DNA of 63,299 nucleotides, counting the filler, from Reticulomyxa filosa (lineage: Eukaryota > Protista > Foraminifera), in assembly GCA_000512085.1 (NCBI GenBank). It is 9 parts of 9 records of this genome, joined end to end, with 100 filler letters (N's around TTAATTAATTAA, not from the genome) between each part and the next. Parts side by side here need not be neighbours in the genome. Positions count along the whole stretch, not along the records: positions 1 to 24,678 come from ASPP01000595.1; 8 more parts are not named here. The stretch is one strand, 5' to 3'. The position numbers were made by a program, and so were the translations under genes. Shown piece by piece: positions 4,064 to 22,851 of this stretch (position 1 is its first letter; every line of letters starts with the position of its first letter). A model generated the notes under the pieces. That model was not told where the DNA came from, searched no databases, and saw only the letters and a list, made by a program, of their open reading frames with translations.

Positions 4064-7000
4064 TCATTCCGTGCTTTCTTCAGATTTTCTCAATTTTTTT
4101 TTATTTCTGGTTTTGGAGTTTTGAGCATTGAAAGAATTTTGGGCACCGAGCAATGGTGTAATTGCTTTCAACAAATTTGGGAATAAAGTAGGATGCAAGT
4201 GCTCTTGAGCAGCCAAAATCTGTTTACATCGTTGTCTTTCTTTTGGGGAATCAAAACAAGCGGGGCAATTTTCATCAATTACTGGCAAATGAAAAGCCTT
4301 GGAAAATTCTCTTGTGCAATGTTCTCTGACATAAATCATGGGACGAATAATTCGAACGTCTCCATCTTGGCAGTAATAATTGGCTTTCATAGTTTGAACT
4401 TGCCCATTGAAAAAAGCGCTCATGAGAAAAGATTCACATAAATCGTCTAAATGCTGGCCCATAGCCAATACATTATATCCATGTGTTCTACAGACCTCAT
4501 ATAATAGTCCACGTTTCATTCGACTGCAAAAACTACAAAAAGACTTTTTTTTTTCATCCATATGTTCTTTGGCTAATTCCATAATTGGTTCGTTGATATA
4601 ATGATATTTAATATCTTTCAATAAATTGTCTGCACTTTTATTTTCATTGAAAAACGTTTTCAAATATGATGGATCGAATTGAGGATGTTGTGGATCGATC
4701 GTGCATGCAGCAACTTCAAACTCAATAGGGGCCTTTTTCTGTAAGTGTCGCAAAATATATAATAACGTCAACGAATCTTTGCCACCAGACAAGGCCACTA
4801 AAACGCGATCATTATTTTTGATCATATTGTAATCTTTAATGGCCTTGCCAATGTCATGACTTAATTTCTTAATGAGTTTTTGTCTGTTATTCGCACTGTC
4901 ATTGGAAATAGAATCGTGTTTGTTATTCTTTTCGTTGTCATTGTATCCATTCCATGGTTTGTAATCAACACATTGACAATGTAAACACTCTTTCTTGTTT
5001 TTTTGGTGATAGTGATTGCAATTGTTGCACTGTTTTGTGTAATCGTCATGCTCATATTTTCCCCATAGGTTGACATTGTCGTTTTGTACTTTTGTCGTTT
5101 GCTGTGTTTGATTTATCAACGAGCCAAAGAAAAAATAGACAAATATTGCGGTGAATGCATTGGTTGTAGCCAACATTAAAAAGAAATTTGGATTGGTCTC
5201 GTTCCATCGGGTAACAATTGCAAGAGCAAACACAATCCAAAAAATGTGATGCGTCTGCAAATTTATTGTTTTAATCAAGGATAATCTTAACCATGAGAAT
5301 GAAAGTGGAAAATTTACCAAAGTACGATTATTTGCATCACTTATATCTTTTTTCTTTTCCTCAATATTTTCACCTTGATCTTTATTTGTACTTGTGATTG
5401 TATTTGTGGTTGTATTTGTTTTGGTACTTATATTTCCGTCAATAGGAGTGTTCAATGCCTCACTCGGTAATATGAACCATCGGCGTGAATTTTGCAATAA
5501 GCTGCTGTCATCACTAATAAAAGGTGGGTATTTGAGATTGTCTACAATGCTTTTAGCTTCTTTGAGATAGTCATCCATTTCTTGTTCATCCCAAGTATCA
5601 TCTCCCGGTGTGGGCCATTCCAATCTCCACTGCTCATCGTGTTCTACCAATTGTATATGACTCAATGACTTTTTATCCAAGATTGGCGTTTTGAAGCAGT
5701 TGCGATGACAAAAATGACCAGAATCTACATGATATTGATAGAGAGGTAATAACTGTAGGGCATGTTCAATCACAAAGATTATGCAATCAATGATATATTG
5801 CAATTCTCGACGTGTCAATAAATAATGTAAATTAATACGAGTAAAACCTGGTCGCAATATTTCTTGTTTCTTAAATAATTCTTCTTCTAATTCGAGACAC
5901 GAAATAGGATCAGACATTCCCAGTAACCTTAGTGCGTACGGCCCAGCGCATGCACAACCACCACGAGACTGAATCCCAAATAAATCATTTAATAATAAAC
6001 AAATGTAATTGTAATGATAAAAGTAAACACGCTTTTTATCGTTGCTCTCACCGGTAGTGTCAAAGTTATTACATGGAATTAGAAAAGATAAAATTGGTAA
6101 TCGTTTAGTAGCATTTAGAGTATCATTAGAATCGTAGCCCAAAAAATATATTTTTTTTTTATCAATAAAAGGTTTCATTTGTGATAAAAATATATTTAAA
6201 TAAGTTTGCTCAATCGTTTCAATGTTTGAGATACCTACCCATTCGTTTTTGACTTGTAATGCCAATGCACATCGAAGTGAAGCGATAACATTTGGGGTTC
6301 CACCTTTAGAAGTATGTGTTTGTGAGCCAAAGTGTGAAACAGAGTTAAAATAAAAACAAACAAAAAAAACCTTGTTCGCGTTCTTCAACATCTTGCAAAT
6401 ACACATGATGTTCTGGCGTAACAAAAAATACAGTCCCTCCACCGGGTGTTGAGGGAGGTAATTTTAACAAATCAAAGCGATTGAATATAGCTTGATTAAT
6501 AACTAAAACTCCACAACTGCCGACTCCACCCAAAAACTTGTGTCCACTGAAATAAATACAATCCATTCCATCCATCATGTTAATACTGAGATATGGAGCA
6601 CTACCCGAATAGTCAAAGGCACAAATGCCCTTGTACTTGTGAATGAGGTCGCAGATTTTGTCAATGTTCGGTTGAATAATACCGGTAATATTACTTGCTG
6701 CTGAAAATGAACCAATTATTAACACATCTTTTTGACTTGGATTTGACTGTGATGAAAATATATCCTTTAGCGTTTGATCTAATTGCTTTAAATCAATGCC
6801 CTTTTCCAATTCGGTGCTTTCTGGAATCATTCTAATTTTGCATCCGTAGATTTCCATTTCTTTCCAAGGCAGCAAATTGCTATGATGTTCATAACATCCC
6901 AGGACGATGTGCACGCTATATTTTTCACATAAATCTCGCAATTTAATCATATTTATAAATTTATTGATACATTCTGTTGCGCCGTTTCCTACAAATAATA

Positions 7001-7394
7001 CACTATCGCTCTTTCGACAATGCAGTTGACTGTGGACGTAATTCCTTGCTTCTTTTCGCAACATTGTTGTCTGTATTCCTGCGAGTGAGCTGCTTGTATG
7101 AGTGTTTCCGTAACTTGGCATCACATAATTTTTTATGCAGTCTTCAATGCAGGACAAATTGCGCCCACTTGCTGTCCAGTCACAATATAAAATGCGTCGC
7201 TTTTGTTTTTTCTTAGTGTAGTTGTTATTGCCTTTGTCGCTGCTCTCCGCATCGTTCCACTTTCCATCAAACGGGGAGACGAACTGTGAATAGTATCCTA
7301 GCGTCTCTTTCCGCAAATAATCCAGCTTTGACTCCAAGGATGATATTCCTTCCGCGTGTTTTTGTTCATAGCTGTCTTTTTCGTCGTGATTCAT
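4064..7394 (-). CDS. ttcA: Fusion of class-V PLP aminotransferase (SufS-like cysteine desulfurase) and TtcA-like PP-loop tRNA thiolase; 2 exons (7394-6371, 6303-4064), ~1087 aa
   Basis: N-half has YCDWTASG, YGNTHT, EHHSNLLPW, FSAASNITG, SGHKF (PLP Lys), EREQGGTP (restored by removing GT-AG intron 6304-6370) and RGGCACAG (catalytic Cys). C-half has SGGKDS, CSFCSRMKRG, GQHLDD, IIRPM and ENCPAC. Confidence 0.9.
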
Positions 7395-7704
7395 TATTTC
7401 TTCACTTTTTTTTTGAGGAAGCCGGTATTTGTAAAAAAAACTTTGTTTACCCACAACGTTCGTTTAGATAGGCACTTTTTATCGTTCTGCAAATTCTTCG
7501 AGCGATTGTTATATTTACTACCTTTACTCTAATGTGTTTTTATAACCAAGTTTAAAAATTAACTGCCACTAGTGTTTCTCATAACCAAAACAGTAGATGT
7601 ATAATAACTGACCTTAGAAAAAGTTTTAAAATTCAACAACGCAAAACAACCAAAAACAAAATTTCCCTTTCGGACGTGTCATTTTTCACTAGATAAGAGG
7701 AAAA
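7395..7704. promoter_or_regulatory. Probable compact bidirectional promoter between the desulfurase-TtcA gene and NUDC
   Basis: Head-to-head ATGs 310 bp apart. No specific motif identified. Confidence 0.4.
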
Positions 7705-8941
7705 ATGTCAGTAAACAAAAACAAACCCCAAATTGATGAGTTACTGGGTCAAGTTTGGGCAAAACATACAAACATTATACCTGAACTTGATTTCTTGCAT
7801 TCAGGTGGGTTTGTTGTGTGCTTTTTATCCATACGCAATAGTATACATTTGTTCAAATAAAAATAAAAACAATATAGTATTTTCATTCGTAAACCAGAAG
7901 AGCACTTATTTGAGCGATCCTGGAAATGCGAAGAAAGTGCAGCAACTGGTAAACAAGTACATTGACGAAGCAAAAGAACTAAGACTACAAAAAGAAAAAC
8001 AAAAGCCAGAAGAACCCCCAAAACAAGAGACAGCAACTCCACAAACCAACACAACTCAAACTCCTTCCGTAAAGAAAGAAAAGGAAGTGAGTGAAAATAA
8101 TCCAAAACCGGGAGCAACTACTCAAGAACCAGAGAAAGCCAAAGAAAATGGAGAAGAAAAACAGAAAGATGAACAAAAAGATGAAAAAAGAAAGGTTAGG
8201 CTTTGTTTTGATTTATATTTTTTATGAAATACATAACCGCAATCTCGAAACATAAAAAAAGCCAACGATCCGGTAAATAATGGTGGAGTAACTGACAACT
8301 ACGTATGGACACAAACATTGCAAGATGTTGATGTACGTATTCCTATTCCATCAAACTTGAAAGGAAAAGATTTGACAGTCACCTTTGATAAACGCAAGTT
8401 GTTTGTTGGAATTAAAGGCAAACCACCTATTATCAATGTATGATATGTGTAAGGTTTGTTCTTTGGAGAGAGGGCGAAAAGAAAACCAAAATGATGTTTG
8501 TTTTGCAATTCAACAAAACAGGGTCAACTGCACGAGGCAGTGTCAGTTGATGAATGCGCATGGACACTGGACAGAGAACACGGAAAAACAGACAAGACTT
8601 TGACAGTGTCATTGCGAAAGGAAACAGGCATGTGTTGGTGGAAAAGGGTAATCATTGGGGACCCTGAAATTGACACAAGCAAAATCGAACCAGAAAATTC
8701 CTCATTGAATGACTTGGATCCGGAAACAAAACAAACGGTTGAAAAAATGATGGTATGTTCTACATTTTCATTTTTTTTTAAAGATGAGGATTAAAGATTT
8801 TTTAATGTGTTTCAACAGGTTGAACAACGACAAAAAATGATGGGAATACCAACCCAAAAAGAAATCGAGCAACAACAAATGATTGAAAAATTAAAACAAA
8901 AATTCCCAAACATGGACTTCAGCCAAACTAAATTTTCTTGA
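7705..8941 (+). CDS. NUDC: Nuclear distribution protein NudC (CS/p23 domain), 5 exons
   Basis: Spliced product contains NNGGVTDNYVWTQTLQDV, WWKRVIIGDPEIDTSKIEPENSSLNDLDPETKQTVEKMM and FPNMDFSQTKFS*. One apparent 1-nt deletion in the A-run at ~8184-8189. Confidence 0.93.
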
Positions 8942-9728: not shown

Positions 9729-12700
9729 CTATTTTAAATTGCGTTCCGGATTTGTTAACTCTTTTAGCTCAACCTCACATACCCTCTCGACATTCTGGAA
9801 AAAGCGAACTTCCGTTTTTTGAAACAGTAAAGATATGATATGTATAGAGGAATCGTCACGCCTGTGCAAGCCATTCGTTTGGTATATTGGTCAAACACAT
9901 GCAAGTTGTGATTTATTATCACACGAGCTTGAGTTTTCCACAATTGATGCACCTAATTATACAAAGACAAACAAGTCAATGTCACAACAACAAAAAAAAA
10001 AATTTAAAGCTTAACTGGAGATTTTCCAAAGCAAATTAGATATTGGCACTTCCCTTTGACAAAATCTTCAATGGCTGTGTTTGATTCTTGTCCAAACACT
10101 CGATCATTTATTTGAGCAACAATTTCTTCTTGTTGCAATTCTTTTTGAATGGATTCAGCCTATTGAGAATATTTTTTGTGGATAGTATGAACTTTTAATT
10201 TGCTTGTTCTTTGGTCTCATTCCCTCGCAAAATTATAATGCAATAAAAGGAGTATATGTTTCGAGGTAGAAGAACTTGTTGAAAAATAGAACACCAAATA
10301 ATCCCAGATTTAAGAGGATTGGTTTTGCATAAATTTACGAGTGCTTTGTCTCGTTCTTCGTCATGTGCCTCTTCCTCTTTCAAAGGCACATACCAATGGA
10401 AAAAGCGCTGTTCAGATCTTAGATCAATCAAAGTGGGCTTGGTCACAAGTAGGGAAGCAGTTTCACCAACAGTTTTGCACCAAGAATTGGAAAATAATGC
10501 GCATGGGATACCTTGAGGAATTTTAGAAAAGGCATTTTCAACATTCCTCCCATCATGATACCCTAATAATGAGTCACAATCTAACAAATATACTGCAGTT
10601 AGATTTTCTGTCAAATTTTTGCTGTTTGTATCCACAACGATGGCCATGGCCTTTGCCGTTCCTTTTTTTTTTTAATATGTATTGTCATTTTCTAAAAAAA
10701 CTTGGAATTAGATTGCCGTTTCAATGTGCGGATACAATTTCAAAAAGAAAAGAAAGATCACACAAAGTGTACCAATCAAAATGTTTCGGCCATACGATGC
10801 CGCTTTGAAAATATTTGACTTTCGCTCGGAATAAAATCTGACGTTTAAGTCGGGAACATCTTTTCCCATCCTTCGAATGAATTGATTCATGTAAACACAG
10901 TGTGATTCATCACCACATATGATAATCACAAACGAGGGGTCTTTTCTTACGTACAATCGATACAAGGCGGCAATGGCCAACAAAGTGGACTTACCACTTC
11001 CCGCTGGCGATAACACGGTCGAATCTTCTCCAAGAGTTAATCCAGGCAATCCCTGTTCTTGCACTTTTTTCCATGTCTCAATGCCTTCCGCAACTAGTCC
11101 CGATTGTAGAAATATTGGCAGCTGCGCAGTTTGTGTGACTCTCTCAGGAGAATATGACATCGCAGCATGTTCCGATACTTGTCGCAAGGGTTTTCGACCC
11201 TCGCGGGTTTTCATTTCATCATATCCACGTCTTGAATCATAACCACCCCGTTGGTCTCGATTGTGGAATCGACCCCCACGTCTTGGATCTCGAGCTCTTT
11301 CCTGCCTTCGTCGGTCGTCGTATCTGTTACCTGTTGAATATCTTTCCGCACTCACAGTGTCGTCAGCTTGCCCTTCTCTTGTGATTTGGCCCTGATACGA
11401 AGTCCTTGTATCCATTGAGCTTCCAGAGTACTGGGCTCTTCCTTGTCGCTCATCAGGAGGAAAGAACATTCCATTTTTGTCTTTTTGTATCTTCGTGCCT
11501 ATGTTGGGTGGCAGTTGCACATACGAGACTTCAGGAATATCTCGGGTAGTGCTGACATAACCACGCTGTGAAGCTTCAAATAAAGCCCTTTTTAAAAAAT
11601 GTTCGACTCTCTCTTCGCGTGTGTTGATACACAAAAAGCGAAACCAATCAATCCAGTTTTCGCATTTTCTCATTTTATTCCATGCGTCCTGTATTCACAC
11701 ACCACGTCAGTATTAAGCAAGACAGTCTGATACAGATGTAATTTGTTCTATTTCATCATATTTTTACATTCGAATGGTATTACAACAAAAAAAACAAACG
11801 TATACCTCTAATTGAACTCGAGCAGTCGGGTTGTATCCACCATATTTGCGATTGTAGTCAGCAAAAGGTCGATTGAATTGCTCCAAAAATGTGAATTGCC
11901 ACATAAGACATTGTCGGGCATTTTGAGTTGCCTGAAGGTGATTTGCAGTCTCTGTTTTATTGGTGCTTCTAAATCCTCTAATTGCTTATGCTTAGATATG
12001 TAGGATGACACATCTCGACAAAAATGCTCCTCGATGAATGATTTACTGATATCGGCCCAAGTTCGATTTGGCGTTAATAGTAAATACATTAAGACTTTGC
12101 CCAAATGAGGCCAGTTTTCTTGGCTACGCGATTCGCTATCCGTAACAAATTTATCAATGGCATCTTCTGCGTCTTGACTCATCTCCGGATATTTGGAGTT
12201 CAAAAATAACAGTAGATGATGCAGACATGACCAAACAGACAAGAAGTGATGAATTTGCTTGCTGTCGAGAGTTTTGACGTTCGTAAATTGTTGGTTTAGC
12301 AATTCGATATTTCTATTTGCAAAGCGAATAAATCATATGTACATATATGCAAATATAACTTATATATATATACATATATGTGTATGTGTTTGTAATAGGA
12401 AAAGCAAGCAAGAACACGATGCAACAAGAAATTGGTACTTTGCTGAGCAATTCACAGATGATATCCATTGCACCTTTTGACGAAAACGTTTTCTGAGGTG
12501 TCAACAGTGCCAAGTGTTGTTTGATTTCGACTAAAGATTTTTCACCATGTGTGAGATTAATAACAAGAGGTAGGAAGTGTGTAAATTTCTCTTTTGTCGA
12601 ATCGATTCGAATTCCAAGCTTAGACCACGCTGGCAAGGAAATGTAGTCAGAAGACACTTTGAATTTTGACACATAATATTTCTTTGCATTGTCGTTTATA

Positions 12701-14806
12701 TTCTTTTTTTTGGAAGCACGTTTCATTTCATTTTGGGATATCATTTCATATTGGAGCATCATTCCAATCATCGTTTTTGTAAAGCTCTCTTTGGAATAGA
12801 AGCATCTCAATTCGGATCTGCGAAGTAATGAGGCATTTTTTAGAATAAAATTCCACAGCCCACAAACTTGATCTGTGTGTATGGGCGTACATAGCATTCA
12901 CACGTACGTGTAATGTATGTATTGTATATTGCAAGTGTGTGTATTAATTGTGAATGGGAAATGTGGCAAACAATGGCGGTTATGGATAAGACGTAACGAC
13001 ATTGAACCAATTCATGTTGTGACAAATATTCAAAAACACCAATGATACTGTCATGGAGACGAGTAAGCATGGGATCAATTGACGTGTGATTATCTTGAAC
13101 GCCATATTTAAATAGCTGTATCCAATCAACCCGCTGTCGTGTGTCCCATAAGTACTGCCCTTTATTTTGATAAAAGGCCTCCTCGACGGTCAAGTGATTG
13201 TCCAACTGTAGAATTGGTTTCGTTAGCTCACAAAAGTTTAGTTTCACGCAAGCGGACTGTGATTAAGTACGAACGTGATTATATTTTTGTTTGCGCATTT
13301 GCAACGGCAGTATGTTCATAATAAAAAATAAAAAAATAAAAAAATGAAAAACAAACAAACAAACCGCCAAGCCGACAAAGGGATGTAAGGTTCCTTCTCG
13401 AAAGGACTCGGGCATAGGATGTTTAACACATAGCTTGCCATTGATAAAGAATCTCAATACTTGATCTTCGAAGTCGGCAGCGCACACCACAATATCTCCT
13501 TCGGTAAAACCAACAGATAACTCTTGGGTGAGGGCGACACGATAGGGTTGCTTATGTGTCAACACCGACTTTACTTCATTCGCAAAATAGCGATTGCCCA
13601 GCGCTATAAATTCACATTCTCCGGTCATTTCTTCAAAGCTCTCTTTTAAACACCATCCCAAACGCACTGCCGTTACGTTATTAATTCCCAAATTCACTCG
13701 AATTATTTGCGCTTCGAAGTACACCCGCGCAAAGCTACATTCTATGTTTTGTCGACACACACACATCCACATACATATATACGGCTAAAAAATAAAAATA
13801 CACAATGTATGAACCAATGACTTAACCGACATCAGGCACCCGAACATCGTGCCAATCTTGATCGTGATCAATAATCATTGGCTCTCGTGCTTTCAACACA
13901 GTCATTTCATTTTTGGCTGATCCATAACACAGGCCTTTGGCAGGCACTGATCGATCATGGCTATGGCCACACCATATGCATGTATACTCGCTCAGTTGTT
14001 GTTTCACTTTCTCTATTTCAGCTTTCTTTTTCCCGTTGTCAGATGTCTCGTTGAGAATTCGATTTACCTCGGTTAGAATGTCTATCACTCTTGTCGTGGG
14101 TGACCACTCCATTGCTTTATTTTTTATCACATATTATTATTTGTCATTTTTTATTTTGTTTACAAGCTTGTTAATAAAATTACTTGCTCTTTTTTTTTAT
14201 TATTATTTTTTATAAAAAAAATAAATATACGCAATTTTGTGTGTTAGTAAGTTGCGAGATTGGAAGATTTACACACGTTGTAGCAACTGTAATTTGACCA
14301 TGAGTTTGTGATTTACATCTACAATCAACGGATGTTTGAAAGGAATATTCGCAATGGTGATTGGTGATACAATTTCAACATTGGGCGGTTTCTTTGGGAA
14401 TTCTCTGGGAAATTCCAATATTCCATGGATGCACAATTTTGCATATTTGCCACTTTTTGGCCATATGTTAAAATGCCTTTTGTTGAAAAATAAGTCAATG
14501 CCAATAACAATACAAAATAAATGTATAAGTAAATACAGTTCACGTAATGAACATACCATTCTTCGGGCTTTTCTTTCAGAGGAAATACATTCATCTGAAA
14601 AGGTTTTTTTTGTGGTTTGTTTCAATATTGTTAGCACATACATAAAAATCAATGTCTCTAAGTTTTTTCGTTTTGCATCAACATAATTTCTCAACATTCA
14701 AATCCTTTTGCTGCAGTTGTGAATGAAATGATGTCAAGCTTTCTTCGATCCATTTTTTTGCACTTTCTTCTACAAATCGTCTTGTCTCATTATCGTCATA
14801 AGACAT
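9729..14806 (-). CDS. Multi-exon multidomain protein: inactive E2/UBC fold, SPRY, unknown helical domain, RG-rich linker, degenerate DEAD-box (eIF4A-like) helicase
   Basis: UBC: PEEWHFNIWP..LEFPREFPKKPP..HPLI..EWSPTTRVIDIL. SPRY: YFEAQI..RLGW..EGDIVVCAADF..FFINGK..LHPFVGL. Helicase: VQEQGLP, SPAGSGKS, ILIGT, LLDCDSLL, LFSNS, YTKRMACTG(R). Exons join in frame apart from 1-nt deletions at ~11934 and ~9861. Confidence 0.72.
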
Positions 14807-15321: not shown

Positions 15322-17235
15322 TTAAGTATTTGGGGAAAGAAAAAAAACAATAAAAAAAAGAATAAAATTTTGTGTGTGCACGCCGATATAACAAAAATGT
15401 AAAAAAAAAAAATAAAAAAAATAAACAAGATGAAAATCAATCCGAAAGACAATAGTTTGATAGAAATTGCAAACTATTTTTGCTTTGTTTTTTCCCTTCC
15501 TCTTTTCCGTTTCCTTTTTCTTCTCTTCCTCTTCCTGTTTTTCCTTCGTCAGCAAGTATTGGCCATGTAATGACTCAAGTATTGAAAACAACAACAGGTT
15601 CATTTTCTCCCACCGAAATGGACACATGTTGAGGATTATTGACAGGGTCTGGTATTTCCACTGTCAAGAACCGATCAGTATTATTTCTTGTGGTCGCAGT
15701 GGCAGGACACTTGAGCAAGAGTTGAAAAGCGATAAGTTGTTGAATAATCTTTTGTTCGATGCAGAGATAGTCATTGACACTAACTCCCAAAATAGAACAC
15801 AGTTTGCTAAGTTTGGAATCTGTGTTTGTTTGGAGTTGTTTATTGGTGATGCGAACACTTTTGTCATATTTTTTAGAAGGGACAGAATGTCGAGTTCCAA
15901 TATGACCTTTTATACGTTTATCTTCTATCAAATGATTTTTATTATTGTCATTGCTGTTGTTACTGTCATGATGCTGTTCATCCGTATTTTCCTTGTTTGG
16001 TTTTGTGGGTTGGAAGGACTTGACATAGTCCAATCGTTTCTGCTCTTTGTCCTCGTTGTTCAAAATGGACCCGCATTTCAAGAGCAGGTTGATGGAGAAG
16101 GCGGCACCAGAGTTTCTTTTTTCGATCATTCGTTTGGACTTGGTGACATGGTGTGAAGAAGACTTGATTTTGTGTAGTTTTTGGCATGCAAGGATGGATT
16201 GTGTAATGGAGAAATACTTGTGCAGCTCCTCCAAGGAAAAGCTGTCGTTATCCTTTCCATTTGCAAATCTTGCAGCAACACTATCAATTCTGGCCACCAC
16301 GTCTTCATTCACAAAAGATAATAGCGACTTTTGCAATGTGCGATGGGTCATATTTTCGGGACAAAGCAAATGTTGAGTGTACGCAACGCGATGCAATATT
16401 TTTTCTTTGTCGCTTTTGCACGTTGCGACTTCGATATTTTTATCCCAGCACAGACATAGCCGTTCTAAGCTGATTATGTCGGTCATGCGAGTGACACCTT
16501 TGGTAATACATTATTGATAAATCATTGATAAATCATTGATGAATCATATAATCAATTATATTTACAAGTGTTATTGTTATGTTTAAAAAATAAATAAATA
16601 AATAGAAAGAGACGCATACCATTGAGTAAGTAATGATAAATGCGATCAATTTGTCCTCGTAACTTTTGTTCTTCCGCCAATCCATGCAATAAAATCTTCC
16701 AATTTTTTTTTTGTTTTCCAACATAGTCTTTTCCTCTTGCTCTTTGGTTTTGAGATTGTTGCCCTTTGCATCGTGATGATACAGCTGCGTTCTTTTTTTT
16801 GTTCGTTGTCGTGTTCATCCACACTGACAGTGGTGATGGAGCTAGAGCTAGAGCTAGAGCTAGGAGCCAGCAGATCATTCACGCTTGCGTGTGCAATGCA
16901 AGAGGGCCGACACTATCATTGTTGATGTGCGTAACATAGCGAAGGAACTCACAAATGTTTTGATGCAACGGGAGGTATTGGTAGTACTTTGGAACATTTT
17001 TCAAATTTTTATTCCATTTCATTTGTGTCGGCTTCTTATGCAATACTGTCGTCCTGTTGGTTTCATTCCATTCCTTTTTTCGCATTGACTTGGTGCAAGG
17101 CCAGTCGCCTCTTGCGCTATGGTCATATTCACATCCGTTGTCATTGTCTTCCTTGCTCGCGTCGTGCGCTGTAGTGCCACGGCCTTCGTGACCGACATCA
17201 CTGTCATTGTTATCATCATCATCATCATCATTATC

Positions 17236-17288
<53 letters not shown>

Positions 17289-19156
17289 CATCATCATCAT
17301 CATTACCATTGGCATTATCATTATCATTATCATTGCCATTAGAATTAATATTGTCATTGACATCGCCGTCCGTCGTCGAGTGACTATACGCATGATCACT
17401 GTCGTCCAAAGGATCATTCGAACTGTGAAAGTTGAAAATGTCGCAGCCGTAGTCCAACAAAAAGTTGCCGCGGATCTGTCTTTCGTTCAAAACGTGGGTG
17501 TTGTACCACTGCAACGCTTGACGCTTCATGATCCGCTCTTGTGGCGTGTCATATTCATTCCAGTTCAAATCGCACACCACCGACTCGCCCTCCTCCTCGC
17601 GCCACTCGTTGATGAACTCTTCTCTCCACTCACTATACAAGTCCGTCAGTCCGTTGTGCTCGATCGCCGACGAATGTCTGGACTTGTGTGTTGCATCATG
17701 AGAGCGAGTACGATTGTGAGTTTTGGTTTTGGTTTTAGTTTTTGTCTTTGTTTTTATTTGAGATTGAGATTGAGATTGAGATTGGGATTGGGATTGAGAT
17801 GGAAGTGAAGGCTGAAGATGGGAATTAAAGCAAGACTGAGACTGAGATTGAACATGGGAATGAGAGTGAGAATGTGATCGAGATCGAGAATGAGAATGAG
17901 AATGAGATGAAACGGGGTCGTTGCTGAACCATCGTTATGTTTGTGCTCATTGGGAGTGTGGTTTCTTGAAACACCGCGAGTGGCGTCACCCAAATGCTTG
18001 GTTAAGAAATGACGACGAATATCTTCACAAGTTTTGTCAACAAAGTTACAAGGCAGATACGAATCCATTACCTCCATTGTCATTGATTGTGAGTTTTGCT
18101 TTTTTTATTACTTGTCATTTTCTTTGTGTGTTTATCAATATTATTGTTATTGTTATTGTTATTGCTATTGTCATTGTCATTGTCATTGCCATTATTATTA
18201 TTATTATTATTACTATTATTATTATTGCTATGGCTATGATAATAGAAATGATCTTTCTTATATTTTTTATTGAAATGATATTTTCTATCATTGAATTGTT
18301 TCAATTGCTCTTGTTTCAACAAGTCCCAATTCCCAATTCCATAACGCTTTGACATCCCGTGAATCAGATTCCATTCTTCGCGTAACGACCAGCGTTGTGG
18401 TTCATTTTTGCTCTTTTTTTTCTTTTGCGTGCTGCTCGAGGATATCTCCTCGCTCTTTTCTTCCTTTGTGGTCGACGAAGGACAACACAGCGGCAATATG
18501 GGAGGAATGATTTGGTAACAATGAAACTTCTTATGATATTTGGTCTCTCTTCCATGAACATAACAATCTCCACATATCATCGATCGATGCTTCCAAGTCC
18601 ATTCTTTTTCCCCGCTTTCTTTTTCTTTTCGTTGGCTACATTCCACACATTGGATAAATGCGTCGGTGGGATCCATCTCCACTTCACATAAGTCACACTT
18701 CGGCGTATACCACTTGGCTTCGTTTATACTCTTACTTTCGTTTGAGTCCTTATCCAACTGCATTTCCTTTTTCAGCTCTTCTGCATGTGTGTCTGTCAGT
18801 GTATTTTTTTTTTTTCATATCACATATATCACAATTCACATTTTACATTATACCTCTTTTTGTTCATTATATGTTTTTTTTAAAAAAAAAAAAAAGTGAT
18901 TTGTCTCAGATCCAACAATAAATCCTTGCTTTACAATACTCAATGAGTAATCTCGTCTCTTTTTTTCCCTCATTCCATTTTCTCCCCTACCCGAAATACC
19001 TCCTATTTCCGTTTTCTCGTTGCTTGTCATTAGACAAACTCTTTTGGTCGAAGGTCTCGCTGGGGAATCCTCCAAGTCGGCAGGACGTTTCCGCTTACGT
19101 CTTTTTGGAATATGACCATCTGCTACAGAAGAACCACTACCCTCAGTTATGTTCAT
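15322..19156 (-). CDS. ADA2: Transcriptional adaptor ADA2-like (ZZ zinc finger, SANT, ADA boxes, SWIRM) with low-complexity inserts; ends approximate; several apparent frameshifts
   Basis: CDLC..CVEC..CGDC..H..H (ZZ), WSLREEWNLI..YGIGNWD..KTCEDIRRHF (SANT), REEFINEW..ESVVCDL, GLAEEQKLRGQI and KLCSILGVSVNDYLCIEQKII (SWIRM-like) occur in ADA2 order. Confidence 0.8.
17203..17345. repeat. (ATC/ATT)n microsatellite encoding a poly-Asp/Asn tract in ADA2
   Basis: Direct trinucleotide runs; a similar tract lies at 18140-18240. Confidence 0.9.
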
Positions 19157-19580: not shown

Positions 19581-22500
19581 ATGTCAAGAGACACAAATTC
19601 GGTTTCGTTGGAAGAAACCAACAGAATACGTTCCCAATTGGGAATGCCACTTTTGAGAGTTTCGCGTACTTATTTATTTTACAACAACCTCTGTTTGCCT
19701 CGACCTTCCTTCCCTTCCCTTTTTTTTTTTGACAGGATTGTGTTGTGTTTTTTCTTTTTTTTGGAATTTTTTTTACCTATTCGTTAGAAAAACGATTGTG
19801 TGCGAAATTTCGGGCATGGTGACATGTTGGACTAACTTGATGAAGAGAAAGGACAAAATAAAAACAAAAACAAAAAACAGGCAAGCGGCGGAGACAAACA
19901 AGGAAGAGACAGTGATGAGGATGAAAGAGAGAGTCAACATGAGAATGATGACCGCAGTGGTAGTGATAAAGACAACGACACAGAATCTTCCAAATCAGGG
20001 CTTTTGCTCCAAAAATTACACGAAATGAAAGAACAAAGAAATCGGGTTTTTTTGTGTGTGTGCATATGTGCTTCAATCTTATGTTTTGCAAGGAAAGGAT
20101 TTCGAAAGACTTTATTAGAGGAGCAAAACGACAACAAAAAAAAAAAGATATCAATTAAATTAATGTTATGTTTGTTATGACAATAGAAAGTCAAAACTGG
20201 AGGAATATCTTTAGCAGAAGAGCTCCTGGAAGATACTATTTATTCAGGCTCTTCTGTTTTGGACTGGTATATTTGCATATACATATACATGCTTTTTTTT
20301 TTTTTTATTTAAAAAACATTTATACAATAATTTTAAAAAAATTGGAACGAAGGGTTCAAAAATCCCGCAGCTTGGAAGAAAAGAAAAAAGAAAATGAAGA
20401 ACTGGCCAAAGCACGGAAGCAATTCGAGGAGGAAGAGGATGAACTGCTACACAATAGACAGAAAAAGGAAGACAATGATAACGAAAGCGGCTTGGGCGGG
20501 AAAAAAGTGAGACATGATTTGAGTCAATTCAAGTCAGGCGAAACGAAAATATTGATATTAAAAGACCGTGGCATACTGGACAAGCGCTTGAATGTGATCA
20601 ACGACGAAGACGAGTTGGTCAATGTGGAATTGTTGGAGAACGACAAATTAGCCTTGAAAAAAGCCAGATCGCGCAAGCTGCCTGGATACAACCCTTTTGA
20701 TGAAGATATGAGTAAGAACGAGGTCGGAGAGAGACTGTTGCTGCCCCAATACGAAGAGGAAAAACGGGAACGTGATGGGTTTGCATTGGACAAAACAGGA
20801 AATGCAAATGTTCCACAATTTGAGCGAATCAACGCAACAGAAGGAGCGGCGCCAACAGGTCGCGCCTACGATCTGATGGAAGGACTGCCCACCGTTGAAC
20901 GAGACTATTACACGACAGAGGAATTGGAAGGCAAGTTTCGAAAACGAAAGCGAAAAAGCAAAAAAAATGGAAGCATAAACATTGATGTGCAAGACAAGGG
21001 ACTCAATCCACAAAACCACGCAACCACTGACACAAAAGATGGAAACCATTTGAAAAGCGACTCATTGCAAATGTCAGCTAATGTCTCGACAGATGATAGC
21101 AATAGTCATGCGAATGACAATGGCAATAACGCGATTCATAACAAAAAGCGAAGAAAGCTTAACAATGGACAAACAAGGTACGACTTTTTGGGTGGCGAAA
21201 ATATCGATGAAGAGTCTAGAGGACAAAGAGACGAAACTGCACAGCTGTCAAGAAAAGAGCAACAAAGGGAGGAAGAAAGGTTTGAGCGAATGCAGAAATA
21301 TCGTCTTGCAATTCAAAAAAATAATTTAATGATGGTAAGTATATACATACATGATATTTTTTTTCTCTTGATTCAAGTGAAGTTTTATTCGTGTCTTGTC
21401 TTTATCTCTTTACTATTAAAAAAAAAAAAAAAGCAAGCAAAAGCAGAAGAAGAGCGAGCAGCTCTTCATACACAAGACGACGAAGAAGGATTGGATTCAG
21501 AAACGTCACGCGCGCTTGAACGAGCTGCTTTGTTGGAAAAAAAGAGACAGACCACGGAAGACACTACGCGCAAATTAGTAACAGTAATCAATGAAATGAA
21601 AGACGAAGAGACCAAAATAAAAAAAGAGGAAAAGAAAGATATACTGAGTGAACCAATGATACTCGACGAAAAACCCGAATCCACCAATGGCTTAATGTTC
21701 ACACAGGCCACCGAGTTTTCGCAGGGATTGAAAGATGCCGTGGGTGAAATGGAGGAGGACGTTGAACAGATGAGACGTAGAAAGTTTGGAGTGTTGCATA
21801 TGAATGGAGCCAATGGAGTTGCTCCCAATGGCCATCCAAACAGCAAAGGCAATCCATATGACAACGAAGATATGCCCGCTATCATTGATCCCAAAACAGG
21901 TCTTCCAGTGTCTCGTTCAAGACATCATTTGGATCATTTATTGGAGTTGCGAGAATCAACGACCAACGTCGGCGGGGTGTGGATCGCTCCCGAGGAAAAT
22001 GGCGGAAAAGACAACAACAAAAATGGAGTTTCGCAACAAATTGCTTCGGGCATTGTTAAAGAAGGAGTGAGCAGCAATGATTTTGTATTGCTGGAAAATG
22101 AACCGCTTGTTGCACGCTCCATCGCTGATACATTGAAACACGTCCGAAGACGAGGATTTATGGACGATGAAGAATTTGATGAGCTGGCAGGAGGGAAAAT
22201 CCAACAATTTCGTCCAATCGACATCGAGAAGAAAGGCAATAAAGACCATTTGGAATGGGACGTACCAAAAGTGCTGAAATGGCTACGTGAAGTGGGATTA
22301 GCGCGCTATCAAAACACGTTTCAAAAAAAACAAGTCGACGGACGTGTTTTGGATTCGGTGACATTGGAATTTGGGGTTCGTGTTTTGCAAATGGATGACG
22401 AAGATTGTCACAAGCTATTACAGGCATTGGGAGAGTTAAAAGTTAGCAACGTTGTTCTTCTGACTCTTGTGCAAAACATTTGGCCTTTGAACACAAACTC

Positions 22501-22851
22501 AAAACTATGATTTCACAGGGAGATCCTGCTCCTGACGTCCACTTGTCTTACTTGGATGATACTGGCAGACCAATGACCGCCAAAGAGGCCTTTCGCAAAT
22601 TATCCCATCGTTTCCACGGCAAAAAACCCGGCAAACGAAAACAAGAAAAGAGAATCAAAAAAAGAGAGGAAGAATTTTTTAGAAAAAATCGTAACGGTGT
22701 GGATACTCCTCTAGGAACTTTAGAGAAACTAAAACAAGCCACCGAGTACAGCGGCAAACCATTTATCGTGCTGAATGGCAAAGAAACAACAAAAATGGCA
22801 CAAACAATTGACTATTCCGATGAGAAATATGACGCTAAACGCCGACTTTGA
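19581..22851 (+). CDS. SART1: U4/U6.U5 tri-snRNP protein SART1/Snu66 with an inserted SAM domain; multi-exon
   Basis: N-terminal HIND motif SLEETNRIRSQLGMPLL, KVRHDL..GETKILILKDRGILD..DELVNVEL, and C-terminal YLDDTGRPMTAKEAFRKLSHRFHGKKPGKRKQEKR. Confidence 0.93.

What the first reader, a model, noticed from the sequence alone, without database searches (positions are those of the whole stretch)
4064..7394. Eukaryotic single-chain sulfur relay: SufS-like cysteine desulfurase fused to bacterial-type TtcA tRNA thiolase
Seen: one ~1087-aa spliced gene joins a complete PLP desulfurase (SGHK lysine, RGGCACAG cysteine) to a complete PP-loop enzyme (SGGKDS, CSFC, GQHLDD, CPAC). The intron falls exactly inside EREQ/GGTP, so the gene is nuclear and not a bacterial contaminant. 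Known: bacterial TtcA makes 2-thiocytidine at tRNA position 32 using a [4Fe-4S] cluster and sulfur from a separate IscS. Eukaryotic cytosolic thiolation (s2U34) uses Nfs1-Uba4-Urm1-Ncs6/Ncs2, and s2C32 is not an established eukaryotic modification. The C-domain has the two-CxxC TtcA layout and lacks the C-terminal zinc finger of Ncs6/TtuA. The acidic N-terminus (MNHDEKDSYEQ) is not a mitochondrial presequence. Inference: a self-sufficient extra-mitochondrial RNA thiolation system with an unknown target. I recall similar automated annotations in other protists and invertebrates (not verified), so the novelty would be mainly functional.
Basis: partly seen in the sequence, partly recalled or inferred. 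Interest (0 to 1): 0.85.

Follow-up and report, generated by a model that had tools for sequence, protein, structure and literature searches.

The report
Fused eukaryotic tRNA cytidine-thiolating enzyme
This foraminiferan gene joins an enzyme that pulls sulfur from cysteine to one that puts sulfur on tRNA; the same fusion was reported weeks ago in sea slugs with the matching tRNA mark, and it turns out to be spread over many major eukaryote lineages.

Summary
A two-exon minus-strand gene (7394-4064, 67-nt GT-AG intron, 1087 aa; Reticulomyxa filosa RFI_00557) joins a SufS-type cysteine desulfurase to a TtcA-type thiolase, with the catalytic residues intact. It is not a new system. A September 2026 preprint describes the same fusion in Aplysia and 28 molluscs and maps 2-thiocytidine to C32 of Aplysia tRNA-Lys(UUU); no enzyme test was done. 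Added here: (1) 116 of 119 top relatives carry both domains, from Rhizaria, stramenopiles, alveolates, cryptophytes, Telonema, Amoebozoa, Discoba and choanoflagellates, plus molluscs; one origin is not rejected. (2) The second Cys of an invariant GCxCAG motif (C460) aligns with SufS C364, the catalytic cysteine the preprint could not place. (3) The thiolase belongs to a 'CPAC' subclade shared with stand-alone proteobacterial TtcA (48-58% identity; E. coli 33%). (4) Only 1 of 104 N-termini looks like a mitochondrial presequence. Best reading: a cytosolic s2C32 tRNA writer with its own sulfur donor (0.75). It would still need outside Fe-S assembly. Expression, activity and target in Reticulomyxa are untested.

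The parts
6371..7394 (-). Exon 1 (Met1 to first base of Gly342 codon): acidic N-terminus and the PLP-binding part of the desulfurase
6304..6370 (-). Intron, 67 nt, GT..AG, phase 1; splits EREQG/GTP
   Evidence: same model as RFI_00557; not shown by reads
4064..6303 (-). Exon 2: rest of the desulfurase, linker, TtcA domain, stop codon
5723..7205 (-). SufS-type (group II) cysteine desulfurase domain, about residues 64-535 (spans the intron)
   Evidence: fold of relative P0003: Z 31, rmsd 2.2 A over 400 residues to SufS
6537..6548 (-). SGHK motif; K286 is the PLP lysine (E. coli SufS K226)
   Evidence: K in 103/103 relatives
5942..5965 (-). RGGCACAG motif; C460 = SufS C364 (predicted persulfide cysteine); C458 is an extra invariant Cys at the place of SufS H362
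   Evidence: both Cys in 103/103
5453..5722 (-). Family-specific extension after the SufS fold (about residues 536-625, conserved WF); confidently folded in the relative's model, essentially not matched by SufS
5255..5317 (-). Candidate in-frame 63-nt intron (GTAAAT..TTGCAG) in the linker; probably coding, since P0002 aligns weakly across it; unresolved
5108..5278 (-). Two hydrophobic segments (possible membrane hairpin), about residues 684-740; shared only with closest relative P0002
4970..5029 (-). CxxCxHxH..CxxCxC putative metal-binding motif, residues 767-786; found in a subset of the family
4148..4915 (-). TtcA-type PP-loop thiolase domain, about residues 805-1060
4772..4789 (-). PP-loop SGGKDS (847-852), ATP binding
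4526..4537 (-). CSFC (C931, C934 = E. coli TtcA C122, C125, cluster ligands)
4256..4267 (-). CPAC (C1021, C1024; C1024 = third cluster ligand, C213 in MG1655 numbering, C222 in Bouvier et al.)

Best explanation
A cytosolic, single-chain writer of 2-thiocytidine at tRNA position 32. Step 1 (residues shown, chemistry inferred from SufS): the N-domain binds PLP at K286, strips sulfur from L-cysteine and holds it as a persulfide on C460. Step 2 (inferred): the sulfur passes, perhaps through the neighbouring invariant C458 or the family-specific extension that may replace a SufE/SufU carrier, to the [4Fe-4S] cluster held by C931, C934 and C1024 of the TtcA domain. Step 3 (residues shown, chemistry inferred from E. 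coli TtcA): the PP-loop adenylates O2 of C32 with ATP and the sulfur displaces AMP. The cluster itself probably comes from the cell's Fe-S machinery. The target is probably cytosolic tRNA with C32, such as tRNA-Lys(UUU) as in Aplysia. The Reticulomyxa gene is an ordinary member of an old, widespread eukaryotic family.
For: Best family match is TtcA (222.6 bits against TtuA 69, TilS 63, NcsA 35). All three essential TtcA cysteines and the PP-loop align with E. coli TtcA and are conserved in at least 99% of relatives for the cysteines. The domain nests among TtcA proteins, in a clade with stand-alone bacterial TtcA, SH-aLRT 99-100. SufS active-site residues H123, N175, D200, K226, T278, R359 and C364 all have identical counterparts; the family profile scores SufS 116, CsdA 78, IscS 28 bits. 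Both domains lie in one ORF in 116 of 119 relatives, including complete ORFs with transcriptome-assembly names from Leptophrys, Didymoeca, Choanoeca and Telonema. The mollusc counterpart (Elysia P0364) has the same motifs and 50% identity in the TtcA domain. In Aplysia s2C32 is detected on tRNA-Lys(UUU) and this fusion was the hit that a search with E. coli TtcA returned. Only 1 of 104 N-termini looks like a presequence.
Against: No enzyme or knockout test exists for any member; the Aplysia link is a correlation. No Reticulomyxa RNA run or tRNA was available. The domain scores under the NCBIfam TtcA cut-off (222.6 against 272), and I found no tested member of its bacterial subclade. SufS Q203 is replaced by G (family T/A/S). 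SufS-type enzymes normally need a carrier protein (own knowledge) and none is fused. The foram-type linker has a possible membrane hairpin with no known role.
Confidence: 0.75

Rival explanations
1. The TtcA domain makes s2C32, but the fused desulfurase mainly builds or repairs its oxygen-sensitive cluster, or the two halves act apart after cleavage of the linker; substrate sulfur can come from elsewhere.
For: TtcA clusters are oxygen-labile and can be rebuilt in vitro with IscS, cysteine and iron. The linker is variable and disordered. The preprint itself raises cleavage. The bacterial relatives of each half were not found next to each other.
Against: The fusion is kept across many supergroups. 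pTM 0.73 for the 993-aa relative is higher than two independent domains would usually give, a weak hint of docking (inter-domain error was not available).
Confidence: 0.1
2. The enzyme thiolates another position or another RNA (or a small molecule), since it belongs to an untested TtcA subclade.
For: Only 33% identical to E. coli TtcA; below the TtcA cut-off; separated by a long branch from the characterised TtcA clade; lineage-specific metal-binding motif in the linker.
Against: Aplysia has s2C32 and this gene was the TtcA hit in its genome. The two-CxxC layout is that of TtcA, and TtuA/NcsA score far lower.
Confidence: 0.08
3. The enzyme works in mitochondria (or another organelle) on bacterial-type tRNAs.
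For: Proteobacterial closest relatives; Fe-S chemistry is centred in mitochondria (own knowledge).
Against: 1 of 104 N-termini is presequence-like and 95 of 104 are neutral or acidic. The Aplysia target is treated as a cytoplasmic tRNA. The sister bacteria are gamma/beta-type, and the alphaproteobacterial TtcA sampled lies in the other clade.
Confidence: 0.04
4. The Reticulomyxa model is wrong: two genes, a pseudogene or a contaminant.
For: No RNA reads were available; the splice donor is a weak GTTTTT.
Against: Most of the fusion lies in one 746-codon open frame. The intron restores a family motif. Neighbours are eukaryotic (SART-1). The protein groups with other eukaryotic, partly rhizarian, sequences.
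Confidence: 0.03

Closest known systems
Aplysia 'IscS-TtcA' fusion LOC101861551 (bioRxiv 10.64898/2026.09.27.754811)
   Same: Same order of domains, similar size (1177 aa), PLP Lys, CxC pair, SGGKDS, CSFC, CPAC, variable linker. By spacing, Aplysia K301/C448/C450/C588 match Elysia K282/C432/C434/C572, and the first three match K286/C458/C460 here.
   Different: Here a rhizarian protist. The third mollusc Cys (C588/C572) is not kept in Reticulomyxa, so it is unlikely to be the general catalytic residue. The linker has a CxxCxHxH..CxxCxC motif and a hydrophobic hairpin not seen in Elysia. The donor is SufS/CsdA-like, not IscS-like.
E. coli / Salmonella TtcA (tRNA C32 2-sulfurtransferase; Bouvier 2014, PMC4081106)
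   Same: PP-loop, two CxxC motifs, three cluster ligands at aligned positions, no TtuA-type C-terminal zinc finger.
   Different: 33% identity, separate clade; takes sulfur from a separate group I desulfurase (IscS); stand-alone; targets Arg and Ser tRNAs.
Stand-alone 'CPAC-type' TtcA of Thiotrichales, Hydrogenophilus and the Solemya symbiont
   Same: 48-58% identity, shared ENCPAC motif, same clade.
   Different: About 250 aa, unfused; no desulfurase of this subfamily nearby in the loci examined; no functional test found.
SufS / CsdA group II cysteine desulfurases
   Same: Fold (Z 31, rmsd 2.2 A for relative P0003), PLP Lys, RxGxxCA cysteine, most active-site residues.
   Different: GCxCAG with a second Cys in place of GHHCA; Q203 replaced; an extra C-terminal region; no SufE/SufU partner in the chain; forms its own subfamily with stand-alone bacterial members.
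Ncs6/Ctu1, NcsA and TtuA [4Fe-4S] thiouridine synthases
   Same: Same PP-loop fold (TM 0.65-0.72, about 20% identity) and cluster-based chemistry.
   Different: HMM scores 35-69 bits against 223 for TtcA; no C-terminal zinc finger; those enzymes use ubiquitin-like carriers or free sulfide and modify uridine (own knowledge).

Membership tests
Eukaryotic desulfurase-TtcA fusion (Aplysia preprint) | N-terminal CsdA/SufS-like domain and C-terminal TtcA-like domain in one chain of over 1000 aa | tested here: met
Eukaryotic desulfurase-TtcA fusion (Aplysia preprint) | PLP Lys, conserved CxC, SGGKDS, CSFC and CPAC motifs | tested here: met
Eukaryotic desulfurase-TtcA fusion (Aplysia preprint) | Common descent with the mollusc protein | tested here: inconclusive
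   Elysia falls in the same CPAC clade; one eukaryotic clade is not rejected (p-AU 0.93, constrained tree had higher likelihood), but it is not strongly supported in free trees
Eukaryotic desulfurase-TtcA fusion (Aplysia preprint) | Host tRNA carries s2C32 | not testable with these tools
   no tRNA in the window, no RNA run listed
TtcA | PP-loop SGGKDS | tested here: met
   847-852
TtcA | Three cluster cysteines (C122, C125 and the last Cys of the second CxxC) | tested here: met
   C931, C934, C1024
TtcA | Closer to TtcA than to TtuA, NcsA or TilS | tested here: met
   222.6 against 69, 35 and 63 bits; nests among TtcA when rooted on TilS. No TtuA or Ncs6 sequence could be fetched for the tree
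TtcA equivalog NF007972 (E. coli type) | Score above the curated cut-off of 272 bits | tested here: not met
   222.6 bits; by their E-values the bacterial CPAC-type members also stay under it. So it is TtcA-like, not the E. coli-type equivalog
TtcA | [4Fe-4S] binding and ATP-dependent s2C32 formation | not testable with these tools
   needs enzymology
Group II (SufS/CsdA-type) cysteine desulfurase | PLP lysine in SxHK and persulfide Cys in RxGxxCA | tested here: met
   K286 = K226, C460 = C364
Group II (SufS/CsdA-type) cysteine desulfurase | SufS fold | tested here: met
   on relative P0003, not on the window's own joined protein: Z 31.4, rmsd 2.2 A, 400 residues
SufS proper (TIGR01979) | GHHCA motif, PLP-contact Gln203, curated cut-off 475 bits | tested here: not met
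   GCACA; G264; 96 bits for exon 1 alone. It is a separate subfamily
IscS/Nfs1 (group I) | Catalytic Cys on the long SSGSAC loop | tested here: not met
   the family profile does not align to IscS beyond residue 234
Ncs6/Ctu1, NcsA, TtuA | C-terminal zinc finger and best HMM match | tested here: not met
   no Cys after 1034; scores 35-69 bits

The most novel reading that the evidence does not exclude
2-thiocytidine-32 is an ancient eukaryotic tRNA modification, present at or near the last eukaryotic common ancestor and missed because the usual model organisms lack it. It is written by one fused enzyme that gives the cytosol its own cysteine desulfurase and hands sulfur over through a CxC pair without a carrier protein.
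Probability: 0.4. Interest if true: 0.72.

Novelty: new member of a known kind. Interest (0 to 1): 0.5.

Why it matters
s2C has been treated as a bacterial marker, even proposed as an indicator of contamination in eukaryotic tRNA samples (PMC6356711). One preprint now finds it in a sea slug. The spread shown here suggests it is common in protists, including tractable or important ones (dictyostelids, Stentor, choanoflagellates, oomycetes, Plasmodiophora), which makes the writer testable by knockout. Naming C460 as the SufS-equivalent cysteine gives a precise mutant to test. A dedicated cytosolic desulfurase would also bear on how sulfur reaches cytosolic tRNA apart from the Nfs1-Uba4-Urm1 route.

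Tried and rejected
As the operators required, the spliced model was searched exon by exon by reference; the joined protein was never searched or folded, and the full-length fold was run on a natural relative (Leptophrys P0003). The database copy P0001 was used only in local scripts, to compare with each exon and read off motifs. Bacterial operon precursor: not found. No bacterial TtcA locus fetched had this desulfurase nearby; the metagenome loci with both domains whose ORFs I listed (L022, L036, L038, L041, L043, L046) look eukaryotic and nest among eukaryotes where put in the tree; L028 and L055 were not examined further. Three bacterial desulfurase loci had no ttcA. Viral contigs: only ordinary bacterial-type TtcA, no fusion. 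Ncs6/TtuA/TilS membership rejected. A 60-nt candidate intron at 6028-5969 was rejected because it would remove conserved residues. The linker Cys/His motif has no convincing Pfam match and is nearly confined to this family. The careful bootstrap tree did not finish; quick trees were used. The label 'foram' on P0002 in my trees is a guess; its organism was not identified. Absence from fungi, plants or mammals was not tested. Eight literature searches found only the one preprint on this fusion.

Full report
Gene model. The gene lies on the minus strand: exon 1 7394-6371, a 67-nt GT..AG intron 6370-6304 inside the Gly342 codon, and exon 2 6303-4064, giving 1087 residues. Without splicing the first frame stops at 6347. 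Each exon translates exactly to its part of database protein P0001, Reticulomyxa filosa RFI_00557, whose contig has the length of this piece. Neighbouring genes are eukaryotic, for example the spliceosomal SART-1. No RNA run was listed, so splicing is inferred from the restored family motif (EREEGGT in 90 of 119 relatives), not from reads.

N-terminal domain. Exon 1 matches Aminotran_5 and scores best on SufS models and structures. A profile of 103 relatives scores E. coli SufS 116 bits, CsdA 78 and IscS 28. Mapped on that profile, SufS H123, N175, D200, K226, T278, R359 and C364 correspond to H170, N235, D261, K286, T344, R455 and C460; the direct pairwise alignment also puts RTGHHCA on SRGGCACA. 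Two departures stand out: SufS H362 is an invariant second cysteine (C458, 103 of 103), and Q203 is G here and T, A or S in the family. The predicted structure of a full-length relative (Leptophrys P0003; mean pLDDT 83.7, pTM 0.73) superposes on SufS at Z 31 and 2.2 A over 400 residues, followed by a folded extension that SufS lacks. Stand-alone members of this subfamily occur in Vibrionales, Xenorhabdus, Streptomyces and Rhodobacterales; the exon-1 tree does not resolve the origin.

C-terminal domain. It scores 222.6 bits on the TtcA model (cut-off 272), 69 on TtuA, 63 on TilS and 35 on NcsA. It aligns with E. coli TtcA at 33%, with C931, C934 and C1024 on the three cysteines that Bouvier et al. 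showed to be essential (C122, C125 and the last Cys of the second CxxC). Its model (pLDDT 86.9) has the TtuA/NcsA/TilS fold; the PDB search returned no TtcA structure. Its closest stand-alone relatives are proteins of about 250 aa from Thiothrix, Thiomicrorhabdus, the Solemya symbiont and Hydrogenophilus, at 48-58% identity. Trees put the eukaryotic fusions and these bacterial proteins in one clade (SH-aLRT 99-100), apart from E. coli, Pseudomonas, Neisseria, Sinorhizobium and clostridial TtcA. Eukaryotes form one group at 84 under LG+G4 and are unresolved under the mixture model; an AU test does not reject one eukaryotic clade (p 0.93). The direction of transfer is therefore open. No bacterial locus fetched had the two genes together.

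Distribution. Of the 119 best relatives of exon 2, 116 carry both Pfam domains. Named sources cover Rhizaria (Plasmodiophora, Leptophrys), stramenopiles (oomycetes, chrysophytes), alveolates (Stentor, Amoebophrya), Guillardia, Telonema, Amoebozoa (Dictyostelium purpureum, Polysphondylium), Discoba (Diplonema, Percolomonas, Acrasis) and choanoflagellates, with a full fusion in the sea slug Elysia and partial desulfurase pieces from insects, an ostracod and a rotifer. Several are complete ORFs with transcriptome-assembly names, which points to single transcripts. Only 1 of 104 N-termini looks like a mitochondrial presequence (a simple charge count, not a targeting predictor). Absence from yeast, plants or mammals was not tested.

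Linker. Residues about 640-810 are poorly conserved. They hold a CxxCxHxH..CxxCxC motif (767-786) shared with rhizarian, dictyostelid and unnamed relatives and nearly confined to this family, and two hydrophobic segments shared only with the closest relative P0002. A hairpin would leave both catalytic domains on the same side of a membrane (inference). A 63-nt in-frame candidate intron at 5317-5255 cannot be excluded without reads.

What is known. bioRxiv 10.64898/2026.09.27.754811 (28 Sept 2026) reports the first eukaryotic s2C, mapped to C32 of Aplysia tRNA-Lys(UUU), and identifies a 1177-aa desulfurase-TtcA fusion in Aplysia and 28 molluscs, with hits in birds and insects. It did no enzyme test, did not place the catalytic cysteine (candidates C448, C450, C588), did not discuss the fusion in protists and left the origin open. 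By spacing in Elysia, C448/C450 are the GCxCAG pair and C588 is not kept in Reticulomyxa; so C450 is the SufS C364 equivalent. Automatic annotations such as 'ttcA' already sit on several protist members.

Mechanism and verdict. Most likely (0.75) this is a cytosolic s2C32 writer: persulfide on C460, transfer to a three-cysteine [4Fe-4S] cluster, ATP activation of C32. The residues and the fusion are shown; the chemistry, hand-over, location and target are inferred. Rivals are cluster repair or separate action (0.10), another target (0.08), an organellar role (0.04) and a wrong model (0.03). The finding is real and biologically interesting, but the system has been reported. What remains new is the reach across eukaryotes, the SufS-type assignment with a named catalytic cysteine, and the link to a specific proteobacterial TtcA subclade. 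Novelty: new member of a known kind. Interest 0.5.

Noticed in passing
L013:4780-6717 (+), metagenome contig PDWJ01000976.1: A bacterial 646-aa protein fuses an amidohydrolase (Amidohydro_1, NagA_N) to a CPAC-type TtcA domain; one instance, could be a read-through.
   Followed up: partly
L098 (Photobacterium), gene 6001-7539 and upstream genes: A stand-alone member of the same GCxCAG desulfurase subfamily sits with ThiS, JAB, ThiF-rhodanese, CoA transferase, a TonB receptor and a methyltransferase. This resembles thiocarboxylate siderophore clusters (from memory) and fits a sulfur-donor role for the subfamily. In Xenorhabdus (L099) it also follows a methyltransferase.
   Followed up: partly
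P0032, P0073, P0033, P0097: Some family members carry extra domains: thioredoxin-like (PF00085) in P0032 and P0073, HMG box (PF00505) in P0033 and P0097. A fused thioredoxin would fit the reductant that TtcA needs.
   Followed up: no
L004:6001-7670, L005:6001-7334: The bacterial CPAC-type ttcA is followed directly by a lipid A acyltransferase gene in Thiomicrorhabdus and the Solemya symbiont.
   Followed up: no
window 7706-8794 (+): Divergent neighbour about 310 nt upstream; its later exon reads like the C-terminus of NudC (recognised from memory; Pfam gave no hit on the piece).
   Followed up: partly
window 20168-22851 (+): Spliced SART-1 gene.
   Followed up: partly
window 18080-18763 (-), 10708-11673 (-), 14269-14697 (-): Weak ADA2-type ZZ finger, a weak DEAD-box piece and a ubiquitin-conjugating-like fragment (by eye); low-complexity Asn/Asp triplet runs at about 17000-17400 and 18100-18300.
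   Followed up: no
PMC4081106 against L002:3014-3949: Bouvier et al. number the later E. coli TtcA cysteines 200, 219, 222; the MG1655 record has them at 191, 210, 213.
   Followed up: yes
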